From Trichosphaerium sp. ATCC 40318 (taxonomy: Eukaryota; Protista; Tubulinea), in NCBI GenBank assembly GCA_038496445.1, contig JALMLS010000120.1:1-64000 (forward strand): a stretch of 64,000 nucleotides of DNA. Direction: 5' to 3'. The position numbers and the translations under genes were made by a program. Below, piece by piece: positions 9,284 through 36,268 of this stretch (position 1 is its first letter; every line of letters begins with the position of its first letter). The notes below the pieces were generated by a model, which did no database searches, was not told the DNA's origin, and saw only the letters and a list, made by a program, of their open reading frames with translations.

Positions 9284-10710
9284 ATGGAGGAAAAAGAATG
9301 CTGTTTGTCGCCTTTAGAGTCATTTCCACACGAGATTCTGGTGTTAATATGCCACAACCTTAATGTCGAGCATTTCCTTGCTCTTAGCGTAACTTCAAAA
9401 GAGTTTAACTAGTTTTCAGCCGACAATATTTTATGGCAGCGTCTTTACGCCCAAACCTTCATAACGGAACCTAGAGGTAGCGTTTAAAAGGAACAACACG
9501 TGATTTACAATAAACTATACAAGGTGACAACATTAAGGACGCTTTCATCTGCGAATGGAAGAACAAGGTACCGTTCTAACGAAAACCACAAAAATTCGTC
9601 ACTTCAAAGTACAAACATCATTTAACACACTTAGTTGCTGTTACTTAAAATTGACAGGTCCGTATGTCATGCTGACTTATACCTCTCATCTGGTTTTGCA
9701 GTTCTTCTTATGAACAAGACGATGTCATCAACTTACGTTCACCAATGTTGAAACTGTCTAAAAAGCAAAACAAGAAGTTAAAGTCATCGCACTACAGTAA
9801 CTCTATCTTTGCTTCCCAGTTTTTTCTTATTTTGTTTTCAAATCTGAAAAACAAGCACATGATTTACTTGTATTTAGATTAGATGCTGCTTTTTTGGATT
9901 AATAGCTTCAGGATGTGTAAGTTTGTCTAAAAGGAGATTTGTTACAAGCACAACAATATGGCGTGTTAAATCTTTTCAATAGTTTTCGACATGGTTTTTT
10001 TAAGCCACTTTATTTGACTGCTTACTCACTTTGCTTTATTTTTCTGTCTCTAACGAATATTTCCAAGACTTCTATAATATTAAGATATACGTACAATTCT
10101 TTTAGTGGTAAATACGATCCTACTATTGGCACGAATTCATACAAAAAAGCATCAATCAAAACTCTTTTGCAAAAACCATTACCCTTTGCTTATTTGTCAA
10201 TTAGAAGATACAATCCTTATATCTACCTTGAAAGGAGATTTTTATTCTTATATGGACATCACAGATACATCTGGTATGTTTAGGTACTGCGAGAGTTTCA
10301 CCATTTTATCATTTATTTTTTTGTAGTTTTGCGTCCGTGCATCTTGTTCGCCATTTTGATATATTTTTCCTTGTGTACTCCATAGCGCATAAACGTAGTT
10401 TTGAAGAGCTTTCATATTACAGATACGTTATCATGGGTACTACTCAGAGACATGTAGCCATTCTAGTACGTGTAGAAAATGTGTCTTTGCACATATTAGC
10501 AAAATGACTTTTTGTGTTCACATGTGATGTTAGGTGGCAAACAAGTCCGATTTAGAAGATGAAAGACAAGTATCATATGAAGAGGGAAAAGCGCTTGCGG
10601 AGGCATGGGGTATACCATTTGTAAGAGTGAGTTGTAAGACAGGAAAGAATATTCAAAATCTTTTCTCGCTTGCAGTTGACGAATACCTAGTTAAGGTGTT
10701 GGAACAATAA
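9284..10710 (+). pseudogene. F-box plus Ras-like GTPase fusion, multi-exon, with an in-frame TAG
   Basis: Exon 1 LESFPHEILVLICHNLNVEHFLALSVTSKEFN*FSADNILWQRLY (TAG at 9410-9412). Downstream YDPTIG, DITDTSG, LVYSI..RSFEE and VANKSDLEDERQVSYEEGKALAEAWGIPF; no CAAX. Confidence 0.75.
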
Positions 10711-10920
10711 TCATTATGTACGTTTATCTCATGTACCTAAGTACAGTATCTAATATTTGCCTGTTAGTGATAAACCGATAAAACCCCAAGCTATCAAAAT
10801 GGAGCTCTTTCAACGACTTTTATAAGCAAAATGTAAAACAATAAAAATTGTGAGTTAAAGTGTTATGCAAACCACAATGCACGTGCAAACTCATTTTCGC
10901 TAAAAAATCTGCTCGGTTAA

Positions 10921-13154
10921 TTTCGTTCGGGCTAGTAAAAAAAAAATTAGGACTAGTAACACCAGTAAAACTTCGTCAAAACGGCGCAAAAACTATCGGA
11001 AACGCATCTCACAAACATGAGAGGCCTCCTGCGAGAGCATCTTGGCAAAAACAAAAGAAAAATTGCCCGAAAGCGGAAGAACGCAACTTCAACACGTGCA
11101 GCAACTAAAAAACGTAAACTAGACAATAAACAGAAACATTTAACCGATCTACGAGAAAAATTGAATTACATGACTGAAAACAGCTGGAAGGTTCTTCCAG
11201 ACGCAAAAATATCGCTACCAGAGTGTTTACAAATATCAGGCCCTAACTTGGGTTATTTTGAGCGCATTCAATCTAACAGTGTGCTCACCTACACAAAACA
11301 AGTCTATCTACGTTTAATAAAAAAAACCATTTGGAATCACGTGTTTTACCATACGGAAGAAAAGCGGAAACAACTTGTTGCAATTCCGAACAACCAATCC
11401 GAACTATAACACATGGTGGAACACGCCAATCAAACCTAAAGAGGTCATGAAATTCATAGGAACATTGTGGATTTGGGAGCAAAGCAGTGGAGAAAAAAAC
11501 TATGTGCGAGCATGTAATCAATTCATCAAAGCAAAACCAACTTGGTTAAGGAACAATGAGTTGCTAGCACGAACAAGATTTTGCATCATTAAAGCATGTT
11601 TGACATCTGATATTCAAGAACTATGCACTTTATTGAGCGAGGCATTCATGGAAGGTTGGTTGCCGGGTGATATTTCAGCGATAGATGAAACAATTTTCAA
11701 ATTTCTGGGTAAAAGTCTGTATAAAATGGTCATCCACAGCAAACCGAATCCAACTGGTTTGATGATCTATGTACATGTACATGCAATGTTCTCTGACAAG
11801 TATGGCAGGAAACCTTACATACTTGGTATTGTTCCTCACTGGGGACCTGGTACACCGGTGGGCCCGCTAGATGCTGCCAAAAAATTAATAGTTAAATTTG
11901 AGGAGTTTTACAAGTATACACCTCATGTGGTGATGGATTCTAGATTTATGGAGTCACATCTTGTGGAATGGATAGCAGTGAATTGTCAGCAAAGTAAAAC
12001 TGGTGGCATTACCGCTGCTATACCGAAGACACACAAAACAAAAATATTTGATATACTTGAATACAATGTGCCATGTAATAGATGGAGAATAGCAACAAAC
12101 TCAGAGGTAAAGTGGCATCATTCATGCGCAAAAAGGTAGATAATGACAAAATAATTGAATGGCAACTTCTTGGATATGGCTGGAACACTGGTGAACCGAA
12201 ACAATCAATACCTTCAGCCACTTTAGCAGATTACAAAAAAATGTGTAAACTCAGCCAAAACTTTTTGGTTCATTTGTCGAGAAAATGTGGTAGCAAAGGT
12301 ATTGGCAACAATGAAACACTAGCCCAAGAGTTATGTGATTTCACACCAGAAAAGATATTGGCATTATCGGAGAAGCAACAGCAACACACAACTTTAAACA
12401 ACCAACAACAAAATGTAGCACAAACTGACGAATTACATTGCATTGAAGATTGCCTACATTACAGAAAAGAATTGCCTGGTAAACCAATGATTAAATACGA
12501 TTACTGTGACATATGGTTCCATGCTGAATGTCTCAATTGGGACGATAAAACTCTAGAGAAAAATTCTGCATTTGAACAATGGTTTTGCAATTCATGTCAA
12601 AAACACTATACAAACGTTTTGAAAGGACATGCTCACCTGACTCCAAAAATGTTGGGAAACAAGAAAAAATCATTCTTACAAAGCTATTGCACCAAGCTAG
12701 GCCTAAAAAAGCAAGGTAACATTAGTACGCTCATTGACAGATTGACAAATGCTACAAATCCTGAGTGTTTAGACAATATTCAGACCCAACTGGAAAACTT
12801 TTTGGGTACTCCACGGGATGACAAACCTATTCTTCACAAGTTCTATCATGATAATTTTGCGGCTGTTGATAAGGCTAATCAATTGAGTTGGTCAAACACC
12901 ACGCCCGGCCGGATTCAAAGCAATGAGTGCCGTATGACTTTGGGTTTACTAAAACTGACTTTAACATGTACACATACAATTTGTGATTCCATCCTTGAGG
13001 ATGATGCGTTGGACTTTTCCGCTTTACACTACCTAATAGCAACAGAATTGTTTACAGGAGAGCTTTTTGAGCTCAATTAAATTTATTGTAAGTTCACGTT
13101 GTGTGAAATAAAATTTTACTAGTCCTAATTTTTTCAGTTACTAGTCCTAATGAG
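10921..13154 (+). mobile_element. piggyBac-superfamily DNA transposon
   Basis: TTAA at 10917-10920 and 13155-13158; inverted ends each with two copies of a TTAGGACTAGTAA-type motif; internal transposase. Confidence 0.9.
11017..13080 (+). pseudogene. piggyBac transposase with two frameshifts and internal PHD and SAP domains
   Basis: Three overlapping ORFs; SAIDET...SKPNPTGL, VMDSRF and FYHDNFAAVDKANQL match the DDD motifs; frameshifts near 11380 and 12105. Confidence 0.85.
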
Positions 13155-13270
13155 TTAATGACTTGTCGACTTATTTATCTTATTCTTGGAACTCAAAGTT
13201 GCCTTAATGCCATACATTATTCTTATCAACAGCCACGCAACACTCTCGTAAACAAGTAATTATTCACCAT

Positions 13271-14890
13271 ATGAGAAAATACAACGACATTAGCAATAAA
13301 AAGAAGAAACTGAACTCTAAAAACATTCCCCTGTCACTCACTTCCTTTCCAAACGAAATTCTGGCATTAATTTTTAATAATCTATCTTATTCTCGCCGTG
13401 CGAGTGTGTTAGTTTGTAAAAAATTAGCAGATATTATCTGGTATCACGTGGGATTCTCTCGCATAAATATATGGTCACGAGAGCAAATTGACTTTGTTTC
13501 ATCTCGTGGGAGTCTGATTCGAAACACACCAATCAATATCATCAATTTCGAAGATATTCAGGACGACGACATTATTCCTCTTGCTGGTATTCATACTCTC
13601 AGCATAGCAAAGTACTACGACATCACTTCGTATGGCATCCAATTTCTCGCTGGTATTCATACGCTTAGATTGAAGCAATGTTACTTGGCTGATGAGGGAT
13701 TAAGTACTCTCGATGGTCTACATACTCTCGAGATGGATCAAGTTATAGGTGTTACACATTCAGGATTCTCATCTTTTAGCCAACTTCACACATTGAGGAT
13801 AACACAAATCATCGCAACGCCTCAAATGTTCAAAGAAATAGGCGCACTTGGGTTACATACATTCTATTCTAAGTATGTAAACATTTCTGATGATGATGTC
13901 AAAGAACTCGTTGGCGTCAAGGAACTCAGTATTATAGGAGCATCAGGCTACTCTGTTTATGGTCCGTCAAAAGATCCAGTCTCGTCTAAGGGTATAGCAT
14001 CACATGCTGGAGTACAAAAGCTCTGCATTGATATTTGTTTGAGCAAAAAAGCAATACAGGCACTTTCTGGAATCCACACAATACAACTAGCTATGGGAAA
14101 CGTTTTTCAATCACGTGACTTTAGTTTAGAAGGTATAACCGGCGCACATATGGTAACTATACTTAAACACAGGGTAACTGCATTCGCTCTAAAGAGTTTA
14201 ATGACAGTACCAGTACATACGATAAAGCTAAGATGTCAGGTACTTAACCAAGCATTCCAATACCTTGCTGGAGCACATACCATTGATATCTGTCACACAA
14301 ACATAACTGACAAAGAAATCGGCTTTCTGAGCGGTGTTAAGAAGTTATTACTTGATGGTACAAGAATCACAGGAACCAGGTTTGATGCTCTTTCAGGTAT
14401 TCATACTATATCCCTGAATAGCTGTACATTACTAAAAGATGAGAATGTAGCTAAGCTCGCAGGTGTACACACAATAGCACTTGCAAAATGCTCACTGTTA
14501 ACTGATATATCTTTCAAAGCATTGTCTGGTGCTCACACCATTGACCTATCTAATACCGCAGTTACTGATGAAAGTCTTAAAGCGCTTGCTGGAGTTCATG
14601 CAATCAGTATTAGAAAGACAACTGTAACAGATGTCGGAATCAAAGCTCTGGCTGGTGTTCACACCATTGATCTTGATAGTACTTTAGTATCAGATGATGG
14701 TCTTCTCGCGCTGAAAGGGTTATCCATTTTATGCATGCATAACTGTAAGAACATTACCGAAGCAGGTGTTAATAGCCTGGGTCATGTTGATAAGTTTTTT
14801 GGAAGGGAAGATGCAGTTTATCATGGATACAGTGAGGCCAGATATACAGGATCTCAACTACTGGAGAGGAGTATTCATACGCTTTCTTAA
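13271..14890 (+). CDS. Intronless F-box/LRR protein
   Basis: LTSFPNEILALIFNNL...VCKKL F-box followed by many ~22-aa LAGxHTIxL..TxVTDxG repeats. Confidence 0.88.
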   Translation: MRKYNDISNKKKKLNSKNIPLSLTSFPNEILALIFNNLSYSRRASVLVCKKLADIIWYHVGFSRINIWSREQIDFVSSRGSLIRNTPINIINFEDIQDDDIIPLAGIHTLSIAKYYDITSYGIQFLAGIHTLRLKQCYLADEGLSTLDGLHTLEMDQVIGVTHSGFSSFSQLHTLRITQIIATPQMFKEIGALGLHTFYSKYVNISDDDVKELVGVKELSIIGASGYSVYGPSKDPVSSKGIASHAGVQKLCIDICLSKKAIQALSGIHTIQLAMGNVFQSRDFSLEGITGAHMVTILKHRVTAFALKSLMTVPVHTIKLRCQVLNQAFQYLAGAHTIDICHTNITDKEIGFLSGVKKLLLDGTRITGTRFDALSGIHTISLNSCTLLKDENVAKLAGVHTIALAKCSLLTDISFKALSGAHTIDLSNTAVTDESLKALAGVHAISIRKTTVTDVGIKALAGVHTIDLDSTLVSDDGLLALKGLSILCMHNCKNITEAGVNSLGHVDKFFGREDAVYHGYSEARYTGSQLLERSIHTLS

Positions 14891-15343
14891 AATGTTTACT
14901 TTGCAAAGGTTGAGGGGAGTATTTGCGCTTTAATAAACATATGTTTTAATGGATGTGTTGTTACAATTCCGTGGGTAAAAAAGAACTAGACTTGACGATA
15001 AGTCATGTAAATAGCTTAAAGGCTCAATCTGCGCCTGAGCTATTTGTCAGGAACCTGTGTTCCTTTGCTTCCAAAAACTCCGTAGTCATTGCCGATCTGG
15101 CCTGGTACAAATTACTGGAGTCTTCATTTTTGTACATCAGTGAGAGTTGTACAAGCATTAAATATTTGGCGTATTTGGCACCATGTTTTTGAGTTTTGTT
15201 CGGTTCGTAAGTGTTTAAATGAGACGACAGTACTCTTATTTTGCTTCTGTTGTGCTATTGTTGTACGATAGTCGGTTTTTATTTTAATTTTTTTTTGTAC
15301 ATGCTGGAAGCGGGTTTTTTTTTCTTTGTGTTTTCTTTTGAGT

Positions 15344-17932
15344 TTACATTGTAAACTTTGCGTTTTTCTTTTTCTTCATGTTCTGTTTCTCCTCTCTTAA
15401 TAGTCTCATTTTTTCACTAATCTCCTCAGGAGGATACAAGTAGTTTGTAGGAATAATATAATTCTTTGTAGAGTTTTTCCTAAACGAGCAAAACAAGTCA
15501 GTAAAATAGAGTCATCAAAAAGCCAATGCTTTTACAATGAAAAAAAAAGAATGTTTCTTGAGAACCCATAAGGTTTTGGGTTTGTCAAAATCAGAGGTTG
15601 TTACAACTACTTACTTGAGCTTATTTTCATATCTTTTACGACTATTCTTAGCAAGTATCCATCGACGTTGATTGATGTTAAGAATTTGTTCACGAAGTAG
15701 ATTACCTAAGGAAAAATGAGTTCTACTGCACTATGTCTTGAACTCAAATTAGTAGGACTTGACTGTACCTTTTGGTTTTAAGTTTATCAATTTACCAGGA
15801 AGCTCTTCAGGAAGCAAAACTTCATCGAAGTCTTCAACTTCGAATCTTCAAAAAAAAATTAACACGTGATCTTAAGGTATAAAAAAGACTAAAAGATACT
15901 TACCTTCCTCCTTTATGCGATGGTACCACCTTCTTAGGTTTTGGTGTATTACGTTTCTTGACTTCTTCTGGATCCATGAATTTATCAACGATTTTATCAA
16001 CTCTGTAATGAACCAGTAAGAATATAAAAATGAAAACAAACCAAAATAACAAGCGAGAAGTATGCGATGATTTTGAGCTTAAGTCACGTGTAAAATTCAA
16101 AAAACATATCAAGTCGAGATATCAAAAATAAGTAGATCCAGAAATATTGGCACGTGTATAAATAAACTGAAACTACAATAAAAAAAGAAAGGAAAAAAAA
16201 ATCTTGTGTTTGAAGTTGTTTTTTGGTGTATTTCTCTTATTTAATTGCGCGTATACGTACTTGTCCCATTGTTCCTTCTTTTCTCTCAAATATTTCTTAC
16301 GTAAATTATTTCTATGCCTTTCTGTAATAGACACATTGACTCGATAAAACTTTCCATTTGGATTTTGTTTTAGTACAAACTTGAAGTTCTTTTTCCGGTC
16401 TCTGTAGCTACGATCCTGAGGTTTCGGTTCAAAGTGATCCTTTGGAATCTCTAAAGCAGTTTGTAAATAAAAGGAATAGCAATAGTAGATTTACAACCGT
16501 CAACTGTCAGTAACACAAAAATGTTTTCAAAAAAAAAGGTGTAAAAATGTTTGGAGAACGTACCAGCATCATATTTCTCTAACCCTTTGATCTCATGTCC
16601 TGGTTTAAACTCATGATTCTTAAACCTACGTTGTCCATACAACTTTTTATTACCGGCCTTACTACAAATGCGTAAGAACAAGTTTAAAACAAATCAAGAA
16701 AAAAAACAATGTGTTTTTTTGAACTTACTCAGTGTATGTAAAGTGCTCATATAGTTTTTCATTTCTTGCTTCAAGGTCTGTGACTTGTTTTGCAACATGT
16801 TCTAAAATAATTTAGAGATAGATTTAAATAATATTACAACGCTTTGAAGTCATTGGTGGCAATTCAAAACAAAAAACAAGAAAGTGATTTGTTTGCTAAA
16901 AAGTGTCATTGTGACATGTTGACATACCCATTGCTTTTTTATGATCAACCGCGTCTGGGTTGTATGATTGACCAGGAAGTGGCTTAGCTTTTGTACCAAC
17001 GTTAGAGACATCAGTTACAGGTGGTTTATACTTCCGTTTCTAAAAAACAAAGAAACTCAGCAACGAAACAAGTAAAAACTAAAACAAAACAAAATAAAAA
17101 TCTGACTTCCTACGCACGTTGTATGTCTTCATTGAGTTCTGATCAGCCTGATTATCTACAACCCACCTCTCGTCTACATCTACAAATTGTTTAAATAGGT
17201 GTTCTTAATCAAGGAAGCAATAAAAAGAATTTTTTTTCGATTTTTTGAGAAATACCTTTCATTTTTTTAGATCTGTGGTAAACCTTTCTTGAATCATTTC
17301 TAAAGTCTTTTCCCCATAGATCATACGCTTTAAACGATTCTTGATCAACTTGTGCAGCGATATTTCTCTCTGCAAAGTGTAATTCCCTTTTACGCTTTTT
17401 GGAGCCAATCTTTGTTTGTTGTTAGCTCAATGGAAGCGTATACGCGAAATGGAGAAAAAAAAGTGTAAAAACAACTAAATGGCGAGGAAACTACGCGTAC
17501 TTGTTTGTTTTGCGATAGAAGCTCCTTAATCTTACCCACTTCTTTTTCGTAGCTCGTTTGCCTATTTTTTGTAACGTATTAGACCGTTTAACCGTTATGT
17601 CGCGTATTACGCACTTTTTATACGTGGTAGGCGTAATATTAGGCTTCGTATTCGGGTGTGGTATGATATCAATACCGCGGCGTGGTTTATCCTTTACATA
17701 GTCTCTTCGCTGGCTTCTATTTAGCTTGCTCCCTATTAATGTGAATATTGCGAATTTCTGGAGAAGTTGTACGATCTGGGCTTGGTGGGCGATTAATAGG
17801 CGCATTCAGTGCCCGTTCTGTGGCAATAATTTCAACCTCATCACAAGCACGTCTGGCGAATTTTGCAGCCCGTTTCTTCTTCCTTCTCGTTTTACGAGCG
17901 GTTTTAGAACGCAAACTCGGTTTACGACCCAT
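15344..17932 (-). CDS. NOP53: Ribosome biogenesis factor NOP53/GLTSCR2 homologue, multi-exon
   Basis: PLPGQSYNPDAVDH and EVLLPEELPGKLINLKPK|GNLLREQ...QRRWI motifs; basic N-terminus. Confidence 0.75.
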
Positions 17933-18980
17933 TTCTGCAAAATTACAGTTTAACCTTCACTTAAAAACCCAACTATGTTAAGTTGTGCAATTGTGTACAT
18001 AACAATAAATCAATATGTACTATGCTAATACGACTCTAATTGAAAAGAGATTCAACAACATTATAAGCGCCTACCTCTATACAACAATGGTAGAGGCCTT
18101 TTCAGTTGATACCATAAGGTCTTGCCCAATTTATACGTTCTTTTCCTTTGTGTCTTCTTTGTACAATGTTTGGAGCGCTTGCTTGCTTCTCGGTATGGAA
18201 TCTGCTGGAGTACACGAGACGCCATACAAATAAATCATGAAGTGTGACAAGTGACACTCTATAAATTGTACCAGAACTAAATCGTAACTGGCAATTTTGC
18301 TCAACGCTTTAACTATTTCCGTTTCCCGTACCATATTTATTAAAGTTCACAAATACTCCGCTCAACTATTACAAAGTAGATATTGTATTAGACCAGGCTA
18401 ACACCTGCTTCAGTAATACTCGATTAGGTTTTCGTTCTGTATAACATGCAAAAGTGGTCAAAGGTATCACATACAATGTACAGTACTCTATGAGAAATAA
18501 TGTTATGCGTAACAAAAAGGATGATGGCAAGTCATGCATTTTTTTTCTAAGGAGGAATCGAACCTCCATTATTTGAACTAAATCAAAGATGATACCATTA
18601 CACTATTAGATGAAGCACGAACTCGTATATATATTGCATCCTTGTATATTGTTTGTACAGAATTGACTATAAGACATACAAACAGAATATAAAAAATATA
18701 TTGTGGTTTTCATTTCCGAGAAATTAATAAGAATGTATTTCCATTCTATGTAGGACTCGTCGATTATTACGTACAGTATACAGTATTAAAGAATAAGGTG
18801 AAACGCTTACTGCGGAAAAAGCCAATGAGGGTACGAGAACAGTATCACTTGAGTACAATTGAAAAATATTTTACTATCTTTTTTGCGACTCCATTGTCAA
18901 GCATGTATCGTCCGCTATGTACTGTATTGGTGTATTTTATTTAATATACTATTTTACAACATAACCCACCATTTTTTTAA

Positions 18981-19920
18981 TCACATAGTATTAATACTTC
19001 TATCGTCAGCCATCAACAAGGGTTGTATCTCATTATCAAAACTTTTTCTAATTTTAGTCCAAAAAATCATTTGCTTTAACGAGTTACCACAAATAGTCAA
19101 CGTAGCACATGTTAAAATACCCAAAGAGAATGAAGTCCAATTACCAAGATAATTAGGTACATAATGAGCACAAGAATCCTTAGGACAAATAGACTTCAAC
19201 TCTTGTTGCAAACCATTAGGTGATGATACTTGTGTAGCATAAAGAATATAAGCTAACACGGGAATCATAAAGACAATAGTTACAAGATTTATTATCCTAG
19301 TAAACCTATGAAACCAAGCAGCCACCCATTGAATAACAGCCTAAATAAGTAAATCAGGTGAGTTTCTTTTTGATTATTTTCTGATCACGTGACAAAATAT
19401 GAAAACCACAAAGGGAATACATGGGTTGTTAACAAAGTACGTACCACAATGAAGAAAATACCAAAAACTGGGTACGCAAGCGTCTGAATAAGGCGTCCTT
19501 CAATGTTAAAGTCGTTTTCGTTAAAATGGCATGTTTGAAGTATTACTGCGCCTGTTAGAGGAAGTACAGATAGTATAAGCGTTGCTATTGATATCAATAC
19601 AGCCATAGAGGCATATAATGCTGAATTTGTTGCTAGCGTCCCGTATAGCTCTACTACGCTATCGTATTTCGTTTTCTTCTTGTTTGTTTCATTTGCCATG
19701 TTTATAGCGCTATTTACGACGCTCCCCGCGCCGACCACGTGCCTTATTGCTTCCATTGTGGCCCAAAAAATTGTCAACAGAGCCAGACTTAATAATTCAT
19801 TTGTGGAGCACAACTCTCACAAGGTGCGTTGCTTTTCACGCAATGTGATTGGTTGTGAAGCGAATTGCAAACTCATGAGCTTTGCTCGTGTACACCAAGC
19901 ATCTATTGGTATAATGCTCT
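18981..19920 (-). CDS. Multi-pass membrane protein of unknown function, possibly a pseudogene
   Basis: Two hydrophobic ORFs joined by an intron; an in-frame TGA lies just upstream of 19813; start uncertain. Confidence 0.45.
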
Positions 19921-20278
19921 AAAAAAGAAATTAATAATGTTTCAATAGGCTTTTTTTAATGTGCTCAAGAGCTAGGTTCGAAAATAACCTACTAGCCGTT
20001 ATCCCACAAACCTGAGCCTTGAACAGATGAGCCAAGATATTAAATAGAAGGTCTTGTCCGGCGCTAAATGATAAAGTTACTGTCAACTTTAGTATAGCAT
20101 AAATACCACGTGTACAGCACGACCTTTCGTAAATTAGCGACTGTTGGAATTAAACATTCCAATTCTATTTTCTTTTAGCGTTCGGCTTCCGGTTCAACTA
20201 CCTGTAATTCTGTTAAGTCAAGACAAACGTACCAAGTTAAGGTGATTCTTGAACTTCATTAGGCTAAACAAGGTGATT

Positions 20279-21350
20279 ATGCTCCCAAACAACGCTCCCT
20301 TACGCCTTGAAAAAGTTACAATTATTATTCTTGGAGATGGAGCTGTTGGTACGACATAACAGCCTCTTACTGTTAATCAACGTTAATATTACGCATTTCA
20401 GGTAAAACAAGCTTAGCTATACGTTACCAGTACAAACGGTTCCCAACCGAATACGGTACCTCTCTATTTAACTGCAATCGCTTATATTGTTTAGTGCCAA
20501 CAGTATTCGACGATTACAGGTATAAACGTGTTAAATTGATTGTTTACAAACCCTAAAAACATGTTTGTTCAGAGATGCAAACGCTAAGTTTTTAGGCAGA
20601 ACTTTATGTTTACGTTCGTTTTCTTACTTTATTCTCATTTAATTGTTTAATTCTACAATAAAAAGAGTTATTGGATACTGCGGGTACAAAGGAGCTAGAA
20701 AATGCCTTGATTTTTGGATATGCTGTAAGTTAATTAAACCCTAAAATTTCTTGTTTCAGAAGTAGAAGTATCCTCTTCCGTTTGCACGGGGTACCATCAC
20801 TGTGTTGTCATCTAATATATTTTTAGATAGCTCATGTTGCTTTGATATGTTTTAGTATTGTTTCAAGGAGTAGTTTTAAAGCTGTTAGATTCAGGGTACA
20901 AAGGAATTAATCAATACAAAAAAGTTGAAAACTACAAAGCCATTACAACTTAACATATGCTCAGTGGGCAGTTGATGTGGATCAAAATAGCCCCAACGAT
21001 ACACCTATCATTCTTGTAGGTCTGAAAACGGATTTAAGAAATTCACAAGATGACAGTGTTTCAAGAGAGGAAGGCGAAGATATGGCAAGAACTATTAAAG
21101 TACAAGAAACAACTAATTTTTTCTTTTATTCTACCGCTTCGTTTTACTTAAACTAGGCGCACTCATATGTGGAATGTAGTCCTATGACAGGACAGGGTGT
21201 TGACTCAGGTAATGAACATCTATTTGTAACAATGCTTTACAAAGAATTTGACTTGTTGTAGTATTTCATGAAGCGATATTGGCAGTGCTGAATAAAAGAG
21301 GATTCTTCAAAACACATCAATATACTTACTCTAAATGTGTTTTAATGTGA
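20279..21350 (+). CDS. Rho-family GTPase, multi-exon, atypical DTAG-T
   Basis: GDGAVG|KTS, EY|VPTVFD, WDTAGT, LICFS, IILVGLKTDLR, YVECS and CAAX CVLM. Confidence 0.88.
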
Positions 21351-27370: not shown

Positions 27371-27813
27371 ACGAAAGATAAGCATACGGGTAACTTTGGC
27401 GGGTATGACGTAAAATACAACAACCACGTCATGTAAACATAAAAAACAAGCTTTTGGATGGAGCTAATGCCGTTTTTCAACAAAACATTCAGCAAGCTAC
27501 AAATAACGGCAACACAAGTGCGCGGTGTAGTTAAACCAAGCGTTAATTTGGGAATTAAAAATCGTACAAGCCATTTTATTCCGTTTAGGCGCTAATGAAC
27601 TAGAGTTGTGCAAGGCCTATGGTTGTAAGCGATGAACGCGTTAACTATTTAATGACTGGCTTTTGACCTTTTCTTGTCGGCTTTTTTGACATTTTGTTGG
27701 GCGACGAACTGCTGAATAATCCCACTAGCGAGGTACACGACCATTATACGTTTTTGAGACCTTAGTGCAAGTGTAACCTTATTTAGAAACGGAGTTGATA
27801 CCAGTTGAAGGAA

Positions 27814-30111
27814 ATGTCATACATACTCACCAGTAGAACGTTGCTTCGTAAGGTAACTTTGTTTTCTGGACTTGTTTACTTGCGATCGTCCTCCCGCTCA
27901 CTCCATTGTAGCCATATCGTAATAAGAATACTATTCGCACTTCCAAACGTCATGTCGCGCATTGGGGCGAGGATAAGCTAACATGGGCCGTGCTTACGCC
28001 TAGGACAATAGGAAAATCAATGCAAGGCGGTGTAGTGACTCGTTTGCTCTCAACGCCAGGTACAAAAACTTTTTAACCAAAAAAGTAGTCCAACTGCTCT
28101 GCATTACTCTTAGCGGCATCATACGCGAAAACGATAGCGCTAACCGTTATATAATGCAATTATTATCGTTTTGCTTATTGGCGACTTTAGGTCTTGAAAT
28201 AGTAGGCGCACGCATGTATGCACCATCACGTACGCTCTAGATTCCTTTTGCTTCAAAAAATAACAGCCCACCAAGAGGAATTTGTTTCAGAGATGATGGC
28301 TGCGCATAACAAGTATTCAGAAGACAAAGAAAACGCTGAAGCAATAAAAGATTTTGTAGAGCTTAACTTTGGACAAGAAAAATCTAATGCACCTTACCCA
28401 AATCACTGCATGCTGTGCTTGCTAAAAGGTACTCATATCCGCTCTTTGCATTACCCCTCTTTTAACAGCATAGAGCGCTTGGCGTTTATGCCATTGGGAT
28501 TTTATTTGCTCGCTTGTCATCCGTGCACAGTCCACACAAACTTTTACGTTTTTTTTGAATATTTTTTTTGTAACTGGAATGTTTAGGTCCTGATGCTCTT
28601 AACACTGTAAATAGTGTTGCCGGTCCTCATTTCCCATCACCTGCAGGATTTGGTATGCCTTTGGGAGACATAGGATGACCATTGCTTTTGCATTCTAACT
28701 TGATGATAGGTCGTACTATTCGTGGTACTTTTGGTGAATATAAAAAAATTGATGGCAAAGTTTTGCGGTTTCAGCCAAGTATATTTGTCCCTGATAATGA
28801 ACGCCTAAATGACGCTTTTCTTGAGTTATTTGGTACTTCATTAGCTTGTTTATTTTGTGTTCTTTGCTAATTGTAATTTAGCCAAGTACGCTGAGAAGGA
28901 CGGAGGGATTTTGGTACGCAATGTACTTTAATACTATGATGTTTAAAATAATGACATTTCCTTTTTTTCTAAATAGTCAAATGAATGGTATGAGAAAAAC
29001 TACCCTGATACAAATGGTAAGCTTTAAAAGAGATAGACGAGTAAATTAATTGTTTTTTTCACCTTTTTTTTTGACTTTTTATGTTTTAGGTGATGGAATC
29101 CTTGATAAACATGAAACATCGCTTGTTATGATAAAACCTGATTCCCTTGAACGACCTTCTTCATTACCTGGACATATTATGGATTTACTTGGTACTTAAA
29201 GAGTTCAATTTTGTTGGCAGTTTTTTTTTAATTCATTTTTTTTTTCAGGTACTACTGGTTTGACAGTTGTTGGTACAAGGCTTATTTCTATGTCCCTAAA
29301 TGACGCCAAAAACTTCTATGGATTTTTGGAGGGTGTATTCGAAAAGAAATTACGTCCAAAAGGCAAGCATGGAGACACTAACGCTTTTTTTCGTTTGACA
29401 ACTATTTTTTTTTTGGTTTCGTTTTTTTTTCTTAAACTTGTTCACGTATTAATGGTGGTTTTAGTTCAACAGACAATTAAAAAGCAGTTAAGTAATGCTT
29501 TCGAGTTTGAAGTTACAGACGAAGAGATTGACTCTGTAACTGATATTTTCCAAAAGAAGAATGCTAAAAAAGAAGTAACGAGCATTATGGAGTATATGTC
29601 TGGGTACGTGATACTTTTGTTTTGGAGCATGTTATCCCATAATATTCTTATTTTTTCTTCATAGATTGGATATAGATAAAGTAACTGATCCTGACGCTCC
29701 AGGTCCAGCTAAATGCTGGGCGTTGTTGTATAGAGGCGAAAAAGCGATATCAAGTACCAATCATCAACTTTTTTTTTGCGGTTTAGTGTTTCTTCATTTA
29801 ACGATTTCTCTACTTAGCTATGAGGAATAAACTTGGCAGTACTGATCCAAATAAAGCTGATGAAGGGTCTATACGTGCAGACTATGGCAAAGATATTATG
29901 CGTAATGGTGCACATGCTAGTGACTCTGAAGAAAAGTAAGTTTTTTTTTGTTTCAGTTTTGCACCTTTTGGTTAAATGGTTTTGTTTTTTGGTTTTAATA
30001 CTTGTGTTCACTAGTGCAATACGTGAGAGAAAGATAATTGGTTTAATGGAAGATACATCTTCATACGAGAAAAAGATAATTAAAAGTTATTTAGATCATG
30101 TAAGCAAGTGA
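27814..30111 (+). CDS. Two-domain nucleoside diphosphate kinase, multi-exon, with a basic N-terminal presequence
   Basis: Domain 2 has SLVMIKPDS and GSTDP..A..GSIRADYG...RNGAHASDS. Domain 1 has GRTIRGTFG but no NxxH motif. Confidence 0.85.
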
Positions 30112-30530
30112 TAAAAACTTGTAAAAAAAAAAAGTCAGAAGAAAGTGTCAAATGATTTACTTTATTTGTTTGTCATGTTAGATTGTTATAACATCATGTT
30201 ACCATTGTTAAATATATTGCTCCTCTGAATCATTGATTCTTTGGTTACATACGACATATTGATAATGTTGCACTGGCAATACCTTCGCACTGACAAATTA
30301 CAAACAATGCTAGTACTATGTTGTGCATAACAATACCTTGTCTACCTGTGGCAATGATAAACAAAGACATAAACAAGAGCAATGTAATTTTAAGTGAAGT
30401 GCACTGTCCATCAAGTACAGTACTTATTATTGCAGTAGCATTTATTTTATGCTGGCGTTGTGGTTACTATATAGATATACACTCGCTTAATCACATCTAT
30501 AGCGGGATACTTTCGCATTAGTACCAATCG

Positions 30531-30884
30531 TCATGAAACCATTATAAGTATTACATCTTCCAGCACTAGGTGTTCTCTGATTGCATCGTTTACCGCAGTT
30601 TTTCTTGCCTGGTATGTGGTCATACTATACTTAGAAGTGAGTCGAAAGTTGAACAGCGTAGACAATGGAGAAGTGCATACGCCATCATAACTCGTTTTAG
30701 GGCAAGATCCCCAAATGTCAGAGCAAAAAGTTCCCGAACCTCCCTCAGTTTTTTCATACAGCCTTGAACACCATTTGCCTATGCACGCTTCTGCCTCTTC
30801 GTCATTTCCTGATACAGGACATGCGAACATAATGAGTACAAAAAGAATAGCCAAGGATAGCGTAGGTAAAGATAAGTTGCTCAT
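30531..30884 (-). CDS. Small secreted Cys-rich protein
   Basis: Hydrophobic signal peptide and 5 Cys in the predicted mature part. Confidence 0.55.
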   Translation of the reverse strand: MSNLSLPTLSLAILFVLIMFACPVSGNDEEAEACIGKWCSRLYEKTEGGSGTFCSDIWGSCPKTSYDGVCTSPLSTLFNFRLTSKYSMTTYQARKTAVNDAIREHLVLEDVILIMVS

Positions 30885-32290
30885 TGTGAGTGATAATAAT
30901 TTTTTGAGTGAAAAGGTGTAGAGAGTTTTTCAAGAGTTTGTCCGATGTAATCCCGATTTCACATAACACGAAACTACACGACTCTCATGACTGTACACGA
31001 GGACCACATACCTAAGGCAAATGTTGCCTGTTGAAATAAGCCAAAACTGGTACAGCGAACAACGTCAGCTGCCTGTTGTATTAAGGAATGTAACAACATC
31101 CGCAAAAAAGGTTGTTATCTTTTTGTAGCACATATAGTGGTTTATTTTTGTGATTGCTTTATTATGTACAGATGTACTAGATGAGGTGTTGAAGGCCTTG
31201 GCAAGTGTGTAATCTATTAAAACCCAGCGTCAATCAAAAAATGCGAGCTAGAAAAATGTACAGTCAATATAGAAATACTACATACACTACCTCTCTACTT
31301 TCGCTACCTTTTAGTAGCACTGTACTGGTAGTTTGCTCTCGCTTGCAAACGCCAAAGTGCCTTAAAATAGGCCCATACTATAGGTTGCTTTGTTGATTTG
31401 TAGTAGCAATAAATAGAGCATCAAACAACGACAGTAAGTAGTCGAGGAATTCGTGATTCATAGCAAGTCTCTGGTTTTTATCAATGGCAAGTATTTGCAA
31501 AATGCTATCAAGGTGAGACTTTTTTTGTTAGAAAATAGTTGTTCTCAACTTGCTGATTTGAACGCGTGATATGTCCGAAAGAGAAAAATCAAGCCGTTAT
31601 ATACCTACAAGCACTGATACGTGGATTACTTGTAAATATATAAACCGAGAAGGTTGAGAAATAGAGTTGTACATTAGAATGACCAACTTTTTTTGTGGGA
31701 TTCCAAAGGATAATGCGTAAATGTTAATACCCGCCCAATACTTCTATGTGTAAACGAAAGCCTAAACTGGGAGTTATCCAGCAGTGCATTATCATTTGAA
31801 TACGAAGTACTAAGACCAACTCGCAACCTTATCACGACAGCAACAGGATAGCAAGCAGAAATCACCCACCTCACCCTCATGGTTGTATAAAAAATATCCC
31901 AGTGTCCTTTTCTTAAACTCACATACGTGGTGTCAAAACACTTCCAGTGCCTCCCTTTTTCGATAAATCCCAAACGCTCGCTCTGCGCTCAAGCTATCTG
32001 TCAGGGACAGATATGTTCCTTTCCTCCCAAAGATCATCTAGCTATCTCAGGTTGGTTGATTGAGGATGTGGTCTAAACACAGACATAATTTCAAAGGGAA
32101 AAGCTATGTACGAATAAAATTTTAAGACGTAAAATGCGTACGTAAGTTTTTTTGCCAGGCAAAAACAAACTGCTTACTTTTTTCACAATGCAAGTTAAAC
32201 TAACCATTTTTTATTAAACTTATACAAGTACTGGCGCTGATCAAGTCAAAAATCCACCCAAAGCCTAGGTACTTTGTTATTCGCAATGCC

Positions 32291-34275
32291 TTAATAACCA
32301 GCCACATCTAGAGCTCTGGACACCATCACATTTTTGAAAACATCACATAAGTTGACAGAGAAGTGAAGAATTGAGTAGTAATGAAAATATGAGTTTGCTG
32401 TAGTCATTGTGCTGCTTTCCTCTTCATCTGTGACTGCTCCTTCATACATATGAGAAGTGAATAATAGCTGTAGGTACTCAAAAATAGAGTCCATTGTGTC
32501 TAGAAAGAAAGCGTTAGCTAAAGAGCTTGGTCCATTCTCAAAATTCAAATAGAAAAGGGGTAAAGGATTACCTTCAGGGCAATCTGGGAACTTCTCACAG
32601 AACTCACTAGGTACTATATGGTCGTCTTTGTAGATAAATATAGCCATACTACAACCTTTAGTTTTATAAAGGATATTACACCACAACGAGAACTCATGTA
32701 TTGATCTGTGTAGTTTTGTGCCGAAGATTGGATCATGTACACGGTATTCACCAAGTACAATGTTGTACATTATTAAACAATCGTTTCCGTATGCAAGTTT
32801 ATCTTGTATGACGTTTTGGAATAGTGTGTGAGACATTGAAGGGTACATAGTCAACCTAGGAAAAATATAAAGACCAATCACATTACAGTTTTTTTTTTTC
32901 CACTTGTACATCATATCAGTACTTGACATATTACTAATATATTCAAGAGGTTTGTCAGTATGTAGGAGTGTACAACACATGTTTTCAATATGTTCTGGTA
33001 TCACTGTGTATTCTTTATCCAGTATCATTGAAGCAGCTCCTTCGAAACTACCACATTGAGATTGTTAGTACTCCAAGAAAGGACAGAAAATACATACTAT
33101 TTGGCTCGCTCATCATCTTCAACATCAATTGTTTCAAGGCCTTCAGCAATCAGTTCTTGAGCAATTGAAGACTTAATTACCTCTGCAAATTTACTCTAGG
33201 TATCACGTGTAAGTTGTGGTGTAAGTGTAAGTTGTGGTGTAAGCTAACAAAGGTGTTCTTCGAACCTCAGGATTGTCTGTTGATGCCTTCAAAGCAACAG
33301 AAAGTGTGTATTTTTGAATACATCTCTTGAACGGAGAAAAGTCTGGTGCCACTATTGACCTTGCAAAACCTCCCATGCACATGTGTATATTGTTTCCAAG
33401 GAAAAGGACATTCATTCGATACTGTTTTTTTTCCCTTTTAAGTATAGAGGAGATTTTTCGGTCAGGTAAGTTTTGATGTTTCATTCTTTTCTTCATGCGG
33501 TTTGTGTGCTTTCGCTTGGAGAGTGTCTTCTGAACCGTGTATGGATTCAAACCGGCTTTATAATACTTGTTTAAGAATGCATATGTGCTAGCTCTGCTCT
33601 TGATAATCAACAGTAAGTCATAAACAGGTAATAGTACAGCGTATCAAAAAATAGACCCAACTTACTCTACTGACTTCGAATAGCCACGTGAACTGACTCT
33701 GGCAATACTTCGAATACGGCTTTGCTGTTTGTGATATCGCAAGAATACATTTGGCATCTAGAAAGCTTATCACGTGCCATACAATCTCGGTTGGGAGCTC
33801 TAAAGAACAAATGAAAAAGGTTATTTCAAACATCAGAGAAGTTGTTGGAATCTCATTCATTACCTGTGAAGTTAGTGAATGTCGTCACCTTGGCGTTTAT
33901 GGAAATGGTATTGGTGGAATTGTGTATACGCTTCTTGTACCGGAGAGATACGAATGGGTCATTGTGAGAGACGATGTATTGATGAACACTAAAAGTTCAA
34001 ACGGTTTAATGTTTGCCCCATTCACAAGAAAACTGTAAAACCGCAAAAAACGTAATTAATGCGTTTGTTGTAGCTTTGAGAACAAAAAACGAGCGACAAG
34101 CTTCACATACTGTTGACATGCTTCCAATATTGATACAGACGCAAAATTAGGTCGTTTACTGACCCGCCAAGCCAATATATCTTCAAGAACCTGTTTTTTC
34201 TAAACAAACGGCTTAGATCCAAGTCTAAAGAGCCAAAACAACCTTTCGCAATACCAAGATGTCGTACGCTTCCAT
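32291..34275 (-). CDS. G-gamma-like / F-box / degenerate G-alpha fusion protein, multi-exon
   Basis: F-box LELPTEIVWHVISFLDAKCILAISQTAK..; G-alpha-like segments in order: KREKKQYRMNVLFLG, AKYF..MILDKEYT, KLHRSIHEFSLWCN, SMAIFIYKDD, KFPDC, DVFKNVMVSRALDVAGY. Confidence 0.65.
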
Positions 34276-34943
34276 TACTTGACTGTGGTTTATGGTATTG
34301 ACTTTATTTGTACACAAGATTTACTACAATTCTACTTCAATTTTAAGTTTTGTCTCTTTTGGGTATTTGCGCCCCTTTGTAACTGCTTTATCACGTGATA
34401 AGCTTTGTTCGTACAGTATATCGCACGTGTTCCTATAAAACATAAGTTACATTTATCGTACCGTTAAGGGAATGTAGTATCAACACCAAACTACCACGCA
34501 ATACGTTCAACAACCTTGTATTTGTTGCTCTACTTTGTGTTACTGGTGCCAAAATATAAGTTCATTGTTTTCACACTGACACATTTGTAGCCACTCACAC
34601 AACGTCGTGGTGTAGTAGAAATTGATCCGGATTTACTGTAAATTGTCAAGAGAAACACGTTTTTATTGTTTTGATCTTAGTCTTGGGAAAGAACATGACC
34701 GAATAGTTTCATTTCGTTGGTTCTTGTCCATTCTACAAGACGTTCAACTTTATCCTTACGGTCTCCGCTCATTTCCAAACCGAGACGCTCAAGACGCTCA
34801 TCAAGACCGTTGGCATCAAGGGTAGAATACTCCCAGATAAGTACCTAAAGAAGAAACCAGTAAACTGCTTTTGTGAATTCCTATTCTGACCAGGCAATAA
34901 GATACATTGTAGTACTACAATTTTTTTTGCTGAACGATTGATT

Positions 34944-36268
34944 TTATTGTATGTTACACCGCTTTCCTTTTACTTTTTTCACTTTTGCGTATGTTGCATG
35001 ACGAATAGCTTCATCAAAAGCATTTTTGAAACCAATACAAGTAAGCGCTGACATTTCAAGATATTTTGCAACATGCCACTTTTGGGCTATACTAAGACCT
35101 TCATCGTACTGTACTGATGAAGGATCTAGAAAAAAAAAAGTTAATGTCGTGTCCAAACAATCAAGTTTTCTTCGTTTTGTATGTCGTACCATCCTTTCTT
35201 AAATCGGCTTTAGTACCAACAAGTAGTATGGGTACGTCTGGTAAGTTTCTTCTGACTTCAGGTATCCAGTTATTGATAGCGTTATGTAACGATTGTCTAT
35301 TAACAAGGGAGAAACAAACCATGATAATATCCTGGTGTTTATACGCTATTTGTCGAAGTCTATCATAATCTGATCCTCCTGGCATATCTACTATAGCAAG
35401 CTGTATTATCTGTCCATCGCACATGATATTAGCTGGGTAACATTCCATGACACTTGGTATCTGAAAGAAAAAAAAAATCAAAAAAAAGAGGTCATTCAGT
35501 AGGTATGGAATTCCATTCAGATTTAAAATGTGACGTCAGTGTAAATCGTACGGTGACTAAATTAACGTCATAAGACTACGTACATATTCTCCAGGGAAAG
35601 CATTGGTTGTATAGCTTATAACAGCGCAAGTCTTTCCTAAACTGAATAAAAAAGTTGTTCACCAAAAGTTTTTTTGACTTTCTCCTTTTTCTTGAACAGA
35701 AAAACAAAAAAATCACGTGCCTACAGCAACATCTCCCACAAGTGCTAGGTTTACTTTATGAGCATACTAGTTTCGGTTTCCATAATGAGTACATACAACA
35801 ATATTTTTAGCGCACGTGACGCACCTGCATGCCTTCTTGAGCCACAATGCCTTTTTCACCAGACCATTTCAGCAACGAAACTTTAAACAACCCTTTTTTA
35901 AAATGATTAGACGACAATCAAAGAAAATGTCAATGGTTTGATACCTTTGTAGTGTTTTTGGTTTTTCATATCCTTGAATCAGATTAGAAACTGTTTAAAT
36001 ACCATTACAGACGCTCACCTCAGGTGATGGAGCCTCCCAGGACCTTACACCAGGGAATTCAAGTATATGGCGTTCCCAAAGCGTATTTTTTGTTGTAAGG
36101 TTCTCCCAATGCCAAGAGACAAAGCACAGTGAACATAAATCGTACCTAGACTCGTTAAAAACGAAAACGGGTTTTTTTGTTGATTCGCCTAACAGCGTAC
36201 CACTCTACATTGGAGAAAACCTCAAGCCAGATTATATCAGGAAGTGTTTCCCACGTTAAACCAGACAT
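34944..36268 (-). CDS. F-box plus Rho/Rac GTPase fusion with CAAX, apparently intact
   Basis: Spliced model: MSGLTWETLPDIIWLEVFSNVEWYDLCSLCFVSWHWENLTTKNTLWERH..., then VGDVAVGKTC, YTTNAFPGEYIPSV, DMPGGSDYDRLR, LVGTKADLR, YLEMSALT and RCNIQ*. Confidence 0.85.

What the first reader, a model, noticed from the sequence alone, without database searches (positions are those of the whole stretch)
9284..36268. Candidate system: SCF adaptors built from F-box plus switch-defective G proteins (Ras, Rho/Rac, G-alpha)
Seen: three loci within 27 kb join an F-box to three different G-protein classes, and two of them are adjacent and co-oriented (36268-34944 and 34275-32291). All three lack the catalytic switch-II Gln (DTSG-M, DMPG-G, no DVGGQ). 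Established: F-boxes recruit substrates to SKP1-CUL1, and RhoBTB is a precedent for a GTPase domain in a cullin adaptor. Inference: hydrolysis-dead G domains may act as baits that send effectors, GEFs/GAPs, G-beta, receptors or pathogen effectors for ubiquitination. I cannot establish novelty without a database search.
Basis: partly seen in the sequence, partly recalled or inferred. Interest (0 to 1): 0.9.

Follow-up and report, generated by a model that had tools for sequence, protein, structure and literature searches.

The report
F-box genes fused to small GTPases
Two genes here join a ubiquitin-ligase docking motif (F-box) to a crippled Rac or Ras switch domain, and the Rac one is expressed; the third, 'G-alpha' fusion could not be confirmed, and such fusions are already described in Naegleria and trypanosomes, so these are new examples, not a new system.

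Summary
Partly confirmed.

- **Gene 2** (36268-34944, minus strand) is an intact, spliced 280-aa F-box-Rac fusion. RNA contigs support six of its seven introns directly. The F-box passes Pfam's thresholds. The G domain aligns without gaps to human Rac1. It carries G12V and DMPGG in place of DTAGQ, has almost no Rho insert, and keeps a polybasic CaaX tail.
- **Gene 1** (9284-10710, plus strand) is an F-box-Ras-like gene. Its P-loop lysine is Cys and Gln61 is Met. It has one in-frame TAG inside the F-box. No RNA check was possible for it.
- **Gene 3** (34275-32291, minus strand) is an expressed 522-aa protein with a near-threshold F-box. Its 'G-alpha' part got no support from Pfam, a search of 1.84 billion proteins, PDB sequences, atlas features or motif shuffle tests. 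I treat that domain as an orphan.

The 'local system' reading is not supported. The window holds five F-box genes with varied partners. Unchecked first-reader notes of this scan list F-box fusions to Ras, Rho, Rab-like, Arf-like and EF1A-like GTPases on other pieces of this genome.

The architecture is already published. [quoted passage not shown] Related cases are TbFRP, ARF-family fusions and RhoBTB.

Verdict: new members of a known kind, of moderate interest.

The parts
34944..36268 (-). Gene 2: F-box-Rac fusion, 280 aa. Exons 36268-36201, 36145-36019, 35972-35945, 35892-35825, 35766-35721, 35636-35584, 35460-35190, 35125-34944.
   Evidence: Splice joints in RNA contigs of X1, X2 and X6; open frame. 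Intron 36018-35973 is inferred: contigs stop exactly at its donor and acceptor, but the joint was not listed.
36019..36268 (-). Gene 2 F-box, split by intron 36200-36146.
   Evidence: Joined 50 aa score 33.4 bits on Pfam F-box-like (cut-off 24.3) and 31.0 bits on F-box (cut-off 20.5). The E1-E2 joint is seen in X1 and X6.
35637..35720 (-). GC-AG intron (donor GCACGT) that splits the P-loop GDVAVG|KT of gene 2.
   Evidence: Joint 35635->35720 in X1, X2 and X6, with 4 ambiguous letters. Only the GC-AG placement keeps the frame.
35374..35388 (-). Gene 2 switch II: DMPGG in place of Rac1 DTAGQ (T58M, A59P, Q61G).
   Evidence: Ungapped phmmer alignment to Rac1 residues 33-122.
34947..34958 (-). Gene 2 C-terminal CaaX (CNIQ), preceded by a polybasic stretch.
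   Evidence: Translation. The last exon aligns to Rac3/Rac1 residues 137-191, including the tail.
9284..10710 (+). Gene 1: F-box-Ras-like gene, 274 codons. Model exons 9284-9476, 9524-9567, 9635-9657, 9702-9776, 9883-9916, 10068-10128, 10205-10283, 10327-10465, 10534-10710.
   Evidence: Model built from frames and splice sites, with no RNA check. Pfam Ras matches three co-linear pieces: profile positions 13-40, 68-108 and 111-159. The last exon is nearest to Rap2A/RalA.
9410..9412 (+). In-frame TAG at codon 43, inside the gene 1 F-box.
   Evidence: Same frame on both sides. The Pfam F-box alignment runs through it without a gap when it is read as X.
10129..10204 (+). Inferred GC-AG intron (donor GCACGA) in gene 1. 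It restores YDPTIEDT and the Ras beta2-beta3 length.
   Evidence: Enumeration of all possible introns. It has the same donor type as the RNA-supported GC-AG intron of gene 2.
10264..10278 (+). Gene 1 switch II: DTSGM (Gln61 to Met). The P-loop at 9896-9916 plus 10068-10070 reads GLIASGC|T (Lys16 to Cys).
   Evidence: Translation of the model.
32291..34275 (-). Gene 3: F-box protein of 522 aa with unclassified flanks. Exons 34275-34243, 34199-34111, 33988-33864, 33799-33666, 33598-33266, 33195-33098, 33047-32291.
   Evidence: Splice joints in X1, X2 and X6; open frame. The E5-E6 joint is known only from a contig about 9% divergent.
33666..33799 (-). Gene 3 F-box exon.
   Evidence: Pfam F-box-like 23.6 bits (cut-off 24.3), F-box 20.3 bits (cut-off 20.5), F-box_4 21.9 bits; E=4e-5. 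X6 contigs with no mismatches join this exon to the next one.
32294..33598 (-). No recognisable family.
   Evidence: No Pfam match at E<=1. One spurious repeat hit among 1.84 billion proteins. No PDB match. Atlas leads are weak and are not G-alpha. Motif tests gave p=0.75, 0.03 and 0.47. AF2 mean pLDDT 36.

Best explanation
These are members of a dispersed, fast-evolving family of F-box proteins whose second module is a GTPase-derived domain. They are not a local three-gene system.

Gene 2 is the clear case. It has an N-terminal F-box, a linker of about 50 aa, and a Rac-derived G domain. The guanine-binding motifs are kept (GxxxxGKT, TKxD, SAL). Val replaces Gly12 and Gly replaces Gln61. The Rho insert is almost gone. 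The tail is polybasic CaaX.

Shown: the architecture, the splicing, the open frame and the motif states.

Inferred from textbook Ras/Rho biochemistry: the domain binds GTP, hydrolyses it poorly, and sits on membranes by prenylation.

Inferred from the F-box family: the N-terminus binds Skp1. The protein would then bring Skp1-Cul1 to whatever recognises the GTP-form Rac surface, or bring that partner to the ligase, much as RhoBTB does for Cul3.

Gene 1 is the Ras-type counterpart. It has lost the P-loop lysine and Gln61, so it is probably a nucleotide-poor pseudoGTPase. In this assembly a nonsense codon interrupts it, so it is a dying copy or a null allele.

Gene 3 is an expressed F-box protein whose partner domain is an orphan.
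For: - Gene models and splice joints.
- Pfam F-box above cut-off for genes 1 and 2 and just under it for gene 3.
- Pfam Ras matches.
- Rac1 alignments that show DMPGG and the shortened insert.
- Rap2A/Ral is the nearest match for gene 1.
- Variant counts in gene 3 from divergent RNA contigs are 10 synonymous to 14 non-synonymous, more synonymous than drift would give.
- The window holds five F-box genes with different partners (Rac, Ras-like, orphan, LRR, dsRBD).
- Unchecked same-genome notes list further F-box-GTPase fusions.
- Published precedents: Naegleria F-box-Rab/Rho/Ran/G-alpha, TbFRP, F-box/BTB-ARF fusions.
Against: - No binding, nucleotide or ubiquitination data exist.
- No single contig spans from the F-box exons to the GTPase exons of gene 2. 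The chain rests on consecutive joints, and one of them is inferred.
- An X6 contig has 71 unplaced letters upstream of gene 2 exon 1, so the 5' end may be incomplete.
- The effector loop of gene 2 (YIPSVMECY against Rac1 YIPTVFDNY) and its missing insert mean that classic Rac effectors may not bind.
- Gene 1 has a stop codon and no RNA support.
- The F-box of gene 3 is marginally below Pfam's cut-offs.
- The protein collections held no close relative of this organism, so the size and spread of the family could not be measured.
Confidence: 0.55

Rival explanations
1. The GTPase is the cargo, not the bait. The F-box is a built-in turnover or regulatory handle. It makes a constitutively active Rac or Ras short-lived through autoubiquitination within SCF, so activity is set by synthesis and degradation instead of by GAPs.
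For: F-box proteins are commonly unstable within their own SCF (general knowledge). The TbFRP authors link its F-box to the rapid proteolysis they observe. A GTP-locked Rac would need some GAP-independent off-switch.
Against: It does not explain why the effector loop and insert region diverged, or why gene 1 lost nucleotide-binding residues. No half-life data exist.
Confidence: 0.25
2. The proteins form a non-SCF Skp1 complex at membranes. Like yeast Rcy1 (F-box plus CaaX; recalled from memory, not checked here), gene 2 would bind Skp1 without a cullin and act in trafficking or cytoskeletal control rather than in ubiquitination.
For: Gene 2 combines an F-box with a polybasic CaaX tail.
Against: Nothing specific supports it, and genes 1 and 3 have no CaaX.
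Confidence: 0.1
3. Gene 3 really is a very degenerate G-alpha. The locus pair would then couple Rho-type and heterotrimeric-type pseudo-switches to SCF.
For: One motif (TKLHRS..F..WCN....SMAIFIYKDD against the G-alpha alpha3-beta5-NKxD stretch) beats shuffles at p=0.03. Naegleria has F-box/G-alpha combinations. The low-confidence AF2 model has alternating strand and helix.
Against: The Pfam G-alpha model does not match either large exon at E<=1. phmmer against 1.84 billion representatives and against PDB finds no G-alpha. Atlas features point weakly to papain-like peptidases instead. The N-terminal and C-terminal motifs are at chance, p=0.75 and 0.47. The 'G-gamma-like' N-terminus is also at chance, p=0.26.
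Confidence: 0.15
4. The fusions are neutral products of rampant exon shuffling in an F-box-rich genome, and some or all are non-functional.
For: Gene 1 has a premature TAG. Naegleria F-box-Rab-like clades show birth-and-death with disrupted copies. Gene 3 is only moderately constrained.
Against: Genes 2 and 3 keep open frames of 280 and 522 codons across 7 and 6 introns. Chance retention would be about 1e-6 and 1e-11 at 3 stops per 64 codons. Both are transcribed and correctly spliced in several runs. Gene 2 keeps all its guanine-binding motifs.
Confidence: 0.1

Closest known systems
Naegleria F-box-GTPase fusions (Herman et al. 2021, PMC8296547, Additional file 4)
   Same: An F-box is joined to Ras-superfamily domains (Rab-like, Rho, Ran, G-alpha). 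The families are large and divergent, some members are disrupted and some carry CaaX. The authors propose GTPase-dependent ubiquitination.
   Different: The organism differs: the genes here are intron-rich, and same-genome notes mention Roco proteins, which Naegleria lacks. A Ras-type partner with an F-box is seen here, whereas Naegleria's Ras fusion is with BTB. Common origin or convergence could not be tested.
RhoBTB proteins (Cul3 adaptors with an atypical Rho domain; e.g. RhoBTB3 targeting cyclin E, PMC3812982)
   Same: A non-cycling Rho-type domain sits in the same polypeptide as a cullin-docking module.
   Different: The docking module is BTB for Cul3, not an F-box for Skp1-Cul1. In RhoBTB the Rho domain is N-terminal. 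RhoBTB is much larger and has no CaaX.
TbFRP of Euglenozoa (FYVE-F-box-Ras-like GTPase, PMC3593210)
   Same: The F-box lies N-terminal to a Ras-like G domain in one protein. A link to ubiquitin-dependent turnover has been proposed.
   Different: TbFRP has a FYVE domain for PI3P targeting. Gene 2 would be targeted by prenylation instead, and its G domain belongs to the Rac subfamily.
Atypical GTPase-deficient Rho proteins (Rnd, RhoH) - from general knowledge, not checked here
   Same: Natural substitutions at the positions of Gly12 and Gln61 leave the protein constitutively GTP-bound and regulated by expression and degradation.
   Different: They have no F-box, and they retain the Rho insert.
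ARF-family proteins fused to F-box or BTB, and TRIM23 (Vargova et al. 2021, 10.1101/2020.10.31.363457)
   Same: GTPase domains have been recruited repeatedly into ubiquitin-ligase architectures.
   Different: The GTPase family is ARF rather than Rho or Ras.

Membership tests
F-box proteins (Pfam PF00646 / PF12937) | The sequence matches the F-box profile above the curated cut-off. | tested here: met
   Gene 2 scores 33.4 and 31.0 bits. Gene 1, read with X at the TAG, scores 38.6 and 25.4 bits. Cut-offs are 24.3 and 20.5.
F-box proteins (gene 3) | The sequence matches the F-box profile above the curated cut-off. | tested here: inconclusive
   23.6 bits against 24.3 and 20.3 against 20.5. Three F-box models are hit, E=4e-5.
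SCF substrate receptors | Binds Skp1 and assembles with Cul1-Rbx1. | not testable with these tools
   This needs pull-down or two-hybrid tests with the organism's Skp1.
Rho family (gene 2) | A Ras-like G domain that is most similar to Rho/Rac/Cdc42. | tested here: met
   Pfam Ras E=2e-17. The best PDB matches are Rac1 and Rac3, E=1e-24, ungapped over residues 33-122. The nearest atlas clusters are Rac/ROP/RHO3.
Rho family (gene 2) | A Rho insert helix between G4 and G5 (Rac1 residues 123-136). | tested here: not met
   Exon 7 ends at Rac1 residue 122 and exon 8 resumes at Rac1 residue 137, with only 4 residues (D-P-S-S) between them.
Rho family (gene 2) | A C-terminal CaaX prenylation box. | tested here: met
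   The protein ends KVKKVKGKRCNIQ, which aligns with the Rac3 tail. Prenylation itself was not tested.
Active (cycling) small GTPases | Gly12 and catalytic Gln61 are present. | tested here: not met
   Gene 2 reads GDVAVGKT and DMPGG. Gene 1 reads GLIASGCT (no Lys16) and DTSGM. The biochemical consequence is inferred.
Ras family (gene 1) | A Ras-type G domain with the YDPTIED switch I, NKxD and SAK motifs. | tested here: met
   Three co-linear Pfam Ras matches. YDPTIED, NKSD and SCK are present. The nearest solved relatives are Rap2A and RalA. The model has no RNA support and contains one in-frame TAG.
G-alpha subunits (gene 3) | A match to the G-alpha profile (PF00503) or to any G-alpha sequence. 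| tested here: not met
   No Pfam match at E<=1 for the 111-aa and 251-aa exons. No G-alpha was found among 1.84 billion representatives or in PDB.
G-alpha subunits (gene 3) | The G1-G5 motifs (GxGxxGKS, RxxT, DVGGQ, NKxD, TCAT). | tested here: not met
   None is present in the 522-aa translation.
G-alpha subunits (gene 3) | A fold made of a Ras-like domain plus a helical domain. | tested here: inconclusive
   The single-sequence AF2 model has mean pLDDT 36 and is unusable. No homologues were available to build an alignment.

The most novel reading that the evidence does not exclude
Gene 2 encodes a GTP-locked, prenylated Rac that serves as the substrate-recognition module of a membrane-bound SCF ligase. 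Anything that docks on 'active Rac' would be ubiquitinated: GAPs, effectors, or microbial toxins and effectors that target Rho proteins. The many F-box-pseudoGTPase genes noted across this genome would then form a diversified set of decoy ligases.
Probability: 0.2. Interest if true: 0.65.

Novelty: new member of a known kind. Interest (0 to 1): 0.35.

Why it matters
Cullin adaptors that use a frozen GTPase as their recognition surface are well studied only for RhoBTB-Cul3. The F-box versions described in Naegleria and trypanosomes have no known substrates.

Gene 2 offers a compact 280-aa, transcript-supported example. It combines natural G12V and Q61G-type changes with a membrane anchor, so it is easy to test for Skp1 binding, GTP loading and interactors under cullin inhibition.

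This analysis also corrects one over-reading, the 'G-alpha' label. The same reader applied that label to several other loci of this genome.

Tried and rejected
1. **Gene 1 frameshift.** I first read gene 1 as having a frameshift between YDPTIG... and ...DITDTSG. Enumerating all possible introns showed a GC-AG intron (10129-10204) that removes it, so I dropped the frameshift.
2. **TAG as a sense codon.** Rejected. A 1572-codon retrotransposon frame in the same window has no internal TAG. All three genes end in TAA, which is uninformative.
3. **A short intron that skips the TAG.** The only GT..AG candidate is 31 nt long and shifts the frame.
5. **G-gamma-like N-terminus of gene 3.** No Pfam match, and p=0.26 in a shuffle test.
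6. **Papain-like peptidase for the gene 3 C-terminus.** Atlas scores were only 0.82-0.88, below the tool's own 0.9 lead threshold, with no Pfam match. I keep it as a weak lead only.
7. **Identifying the organism or close relatives.** The F-box-LRR ORF finds only distant hits, at most 47% identity over about a third or less of its length. Exact look-up found nothing.
8. **Whole spliced proteins.** They could not be submitted to the large searches. They have no reference and are too long to type, and exon-sized queries are outside the length window of the search for homologous proteins. The database spread of F-box-Rac architectures was therefore not measured.
9. **Reads.** Read laying could be used once, so gene 1 has no RNA test.

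Full report
**Nature of the sequence.** The window is eukaryotic, about 37% G+C. Its genes are cut by many short introns of 43-151 nt. ORF lists alone therefore show only exon fragments, so I rebuilt the three genes.

**RNA evidence.** One search for sequencing runs and one laying of contigs on 32200-36350 were allowed. Four runs held the stretch.
- Some contigs were identical to the window. Many were 90-95% alike, that is, paralogues or relatives.
- The contigs gave canonical GT..AG joints on the minus strand for both adjacent genes.

**Gene 2 (36268-34944, minus strand).**
- The joints give eight exons and an open 280-codon frame.
- Six of the seven introns are seen directly in contigs.
- The seventh, 36018-35973, is inferred. 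Contigs from X1 and X6 stop exactly at its donor, another X1 contig starts at its acceptor, and only this splice keeps the frame.
- The intron that splits the P-loop (35720-35637) is GC-AG. It is supported in three runs.
- No single contig runs from the F-box to the G domain, so the fused transcript rests on a chain of joints plus the unbroken frame.
- An X6 contig has 71 unplaced letters upstream of exon 1. An in-frame TGA at 36337-36335 suggests they are untranslated.

**Domains of gene 2.**
- The F-box is split by an intron. Its second half alone scored E=3e-4.
- The joined 50 residues score 33.4 bits on F-box-like and 31.0 bits on F-box, above both curated cut-offs.
- The large exon scores E=2e-17 on Pfam Ras.
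- It aligns without a gap to human Rac1 residues 33-122 at E=1e-24. There DTAGQ is DMPGG and Thr35 is Ser.
- The last exon aligns to Rac1/Rac3 residues 137-191, including the tail.
- Only four residues stand where Rac1 has its 14-residue Rho insert.
- The P-loop reads GDVAVGKT, which is Gly12 to Val by Rac1 numbering (textbook sequence).
- TKADL and SAL are kept. The protein ends in a polybasic stretch and CNIQ.
- In short, this is a Rac-derived domain that should still bind guanine nucleotide. It has the two classic hydrolysis-blocking changes, a changed effector loop, no insert helix, and a membrane anchor. The biochemical consequences are inferred, not tested.

**Gene 1 (9284-10710, plus strand).**
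- I first saw two defects: an in-frame TAG and an apparent frameshift. Listing every possible intron revealed a GC-AG intron, 10129-10204. Its donor GCACGA resembles the verified GCACGT of gene 2.
- Splicing it yields YDPTIEDT and exactly the Ras spacing up to DITDTSG.
- The nine-exon model reads 274 codons with a single stop: the TAG at 9410-9412, inside the F-box.
- Read with X at that stop, the F-box scores 38.6 and 25.4 bits.
- Three co-linear pieces match Pfam Ras. The last exon is nearest to Rap2A and RalA.
- The P-loop is GLIASGCT (Lys16 replaced by Cys). Switch II is DTSGM. NKSD and SCK are kept. There is no CaaX.
- TAG is unlikely to be a sense codon, because a 1572-codon frame in the window has none.
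- Gene 1 is therefore a pseudoGTPase-type F-box-Ras gene. In this assembly it is a null allele, a young pseudogene or an assembly error.

**Gene 3 (34275-32291, minus strand).**
- It has seven exons and 522 open codons.
- Contigs with no mismatches join exons 1-3, and also join the F-box exon to the next exon. A divergent contig joins the last three exons.
- The F-box scores 23.6 and 20.3 bits, just under the cut-offs of 24.3 and 20.5, with three F-box models hit.
- Ten synonymous against fourteen non-synonymous differences in the divergent contigs suggest moderate constraint.

**The 'G-alpha' claim for gene 3.** Everything downstream of the F-box failed every test for G-alpha.

| Test | Result |
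|---|---|
| Pfam on the 111-aa and 251-aa exons | no match at E<=1 |
| phmmer against 1.84 billion representatives | one hit, a repeat protein aligned by composition |
| PDB sequences | nothing relevant |
| Atlas features | weak scores of 0.82-0.88, for papain-like peptidase clusters, not G-alpha |
| Single-sequence AlphaFold | mean pLDDT 36 |
| Metagenome locus scan | no relative |
| 'G-gamma-like' N-terminus noted elsewhere | p=0.26, and no Pfam match |

I treat this domain as an orphan and give the G-alpha reading about 15%.

**Context.**
- An HMM built from the window's own F-boxes finds five F-box genes in 64 kb. Their partners are Rac, Ras-like, the orphan domain, LRR and dsRBD.
- An unfused Rho-like gene with DTAGT lies at about 20.3-21.3 kb.
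- Genes 1 and 2 have different intron positions in both the F-box and the G domain, so they are not recent copies of each other.
- Unchecked first-reader notes list F-box fusions to Ras, Rho, Rab-like, Arf-like and EF1A-like GTPases, and to many other domains, on other pieces of this genome.
- The phenomenon is therefore genome-wide. The 27-kb span is not a functional unit.

**Mechanism.** My best reading, at about 55%, is that gene 2 is a Skp1-binding adaptor whose recognition surface is a GTP-locked, membrane-anchored Rac. This parallels RhoBTB on Cul3. The rivals are:
- the F-box is a turnover handle for an otherwise unswitchable GTPase (25%);
- a non-SCF Skp1 complex like yeast Rcy1, recalled from memory (10%);
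- neutral shuffling products (10%, most plausible for gene 1).

**Comparison with what is known.**
- The Naegleria fowleri genome paper (PMC8296547, Additional file 4) reports the F-box as the most frequent extra domain on Ras-superfamily GTPases. [quoted passage not shown] Some clades carry CaaX and some members are disrupted. The authors point to GTPase-dependent ubiquitination.
- TbFRP of Euglenozoa is a FYVE-F-box-GTPase protein.
- ARF-family members fused to F-box or BTB are noted across eukaryotes.
- The architecture and the idea are therefore published, though no substrate is known for any of them.

**Verdict.** These are new members of a known kind. Interest is 0.35. It comes mainly from the clean, testable Rac example and from correcting the G-alpha label.

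**Limits.** Spliced proteins could not be submitted whole to the big searches. The collections contain no close relative of this organism. Family size, spread and origin therefore remain unmeasured.

Noticed in passing
window ~20280-21260 (+): An unfused, multi-exon Rho-like gene: GDGAVG|KTS, VPTVFDDY, LLDTAGT (Gln61 replaced by Thr), LVGLKTDL, and a short insert region. No F-box exon lies upstream.
   Followed up: partly
window 34399-34863 (-), between genes 2 and 3: A copy of the last exon and 3' UTR of a highly expressed gene (contig depth 96-167), ending in a SAP-like peptide. RNA contigs leave the window sequence exactly at the acceptor at 34844/34845. Their upstream 30-mer is nowhere in the 64 kb, so the transcribed parent probably lies elsewhere.
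   Followed up: partly
window 35637-35720 (-) and 10129-10204 (+): GC-AG introns with donor GCACG in two G-domain genes. The first is supported by RNA in three runs; the second is inferred.
   Followed up: partly
window 1370-8474 (-): A Ty3/gypsy-type retrotransposon with an uninterrupted 1572-aa ORF (Zn-knuckle, protease, RT and integrase motifs) and a separate 418-aa gag-like ORF.
   Followed up: no
window 11375-13080 (+): Transposase-like ORFs followed by a PHD finger (E=4e-5) and a weak SAP match, as another first-reader note says.
   Followed up: partly
window 41968-42507 and 52192-52707 (+): Two clearly paralogous ORFs of 179 and 171 aa, about 10 kb apart. The first ORF has no Pfam match; the second was not scanned. 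This points to a local segmental duplication.
   Followed up: no
window 54645-54959 (-): The F-box of the dsRBD gene noted by another reader is weak on Pfam (16.2 bits, E=0.01), but it aligns with the other four F-boxes of the window.
   Followed up: partly
window 36334-36350 (-): An X6 contig covering gene 2 exon 1 carries 71 further letters that do not lie on the stretch. This may be an extra 5' exon. An in-frame TGA at 36337-36335 suggests it is non-coding.
   Followed up: no
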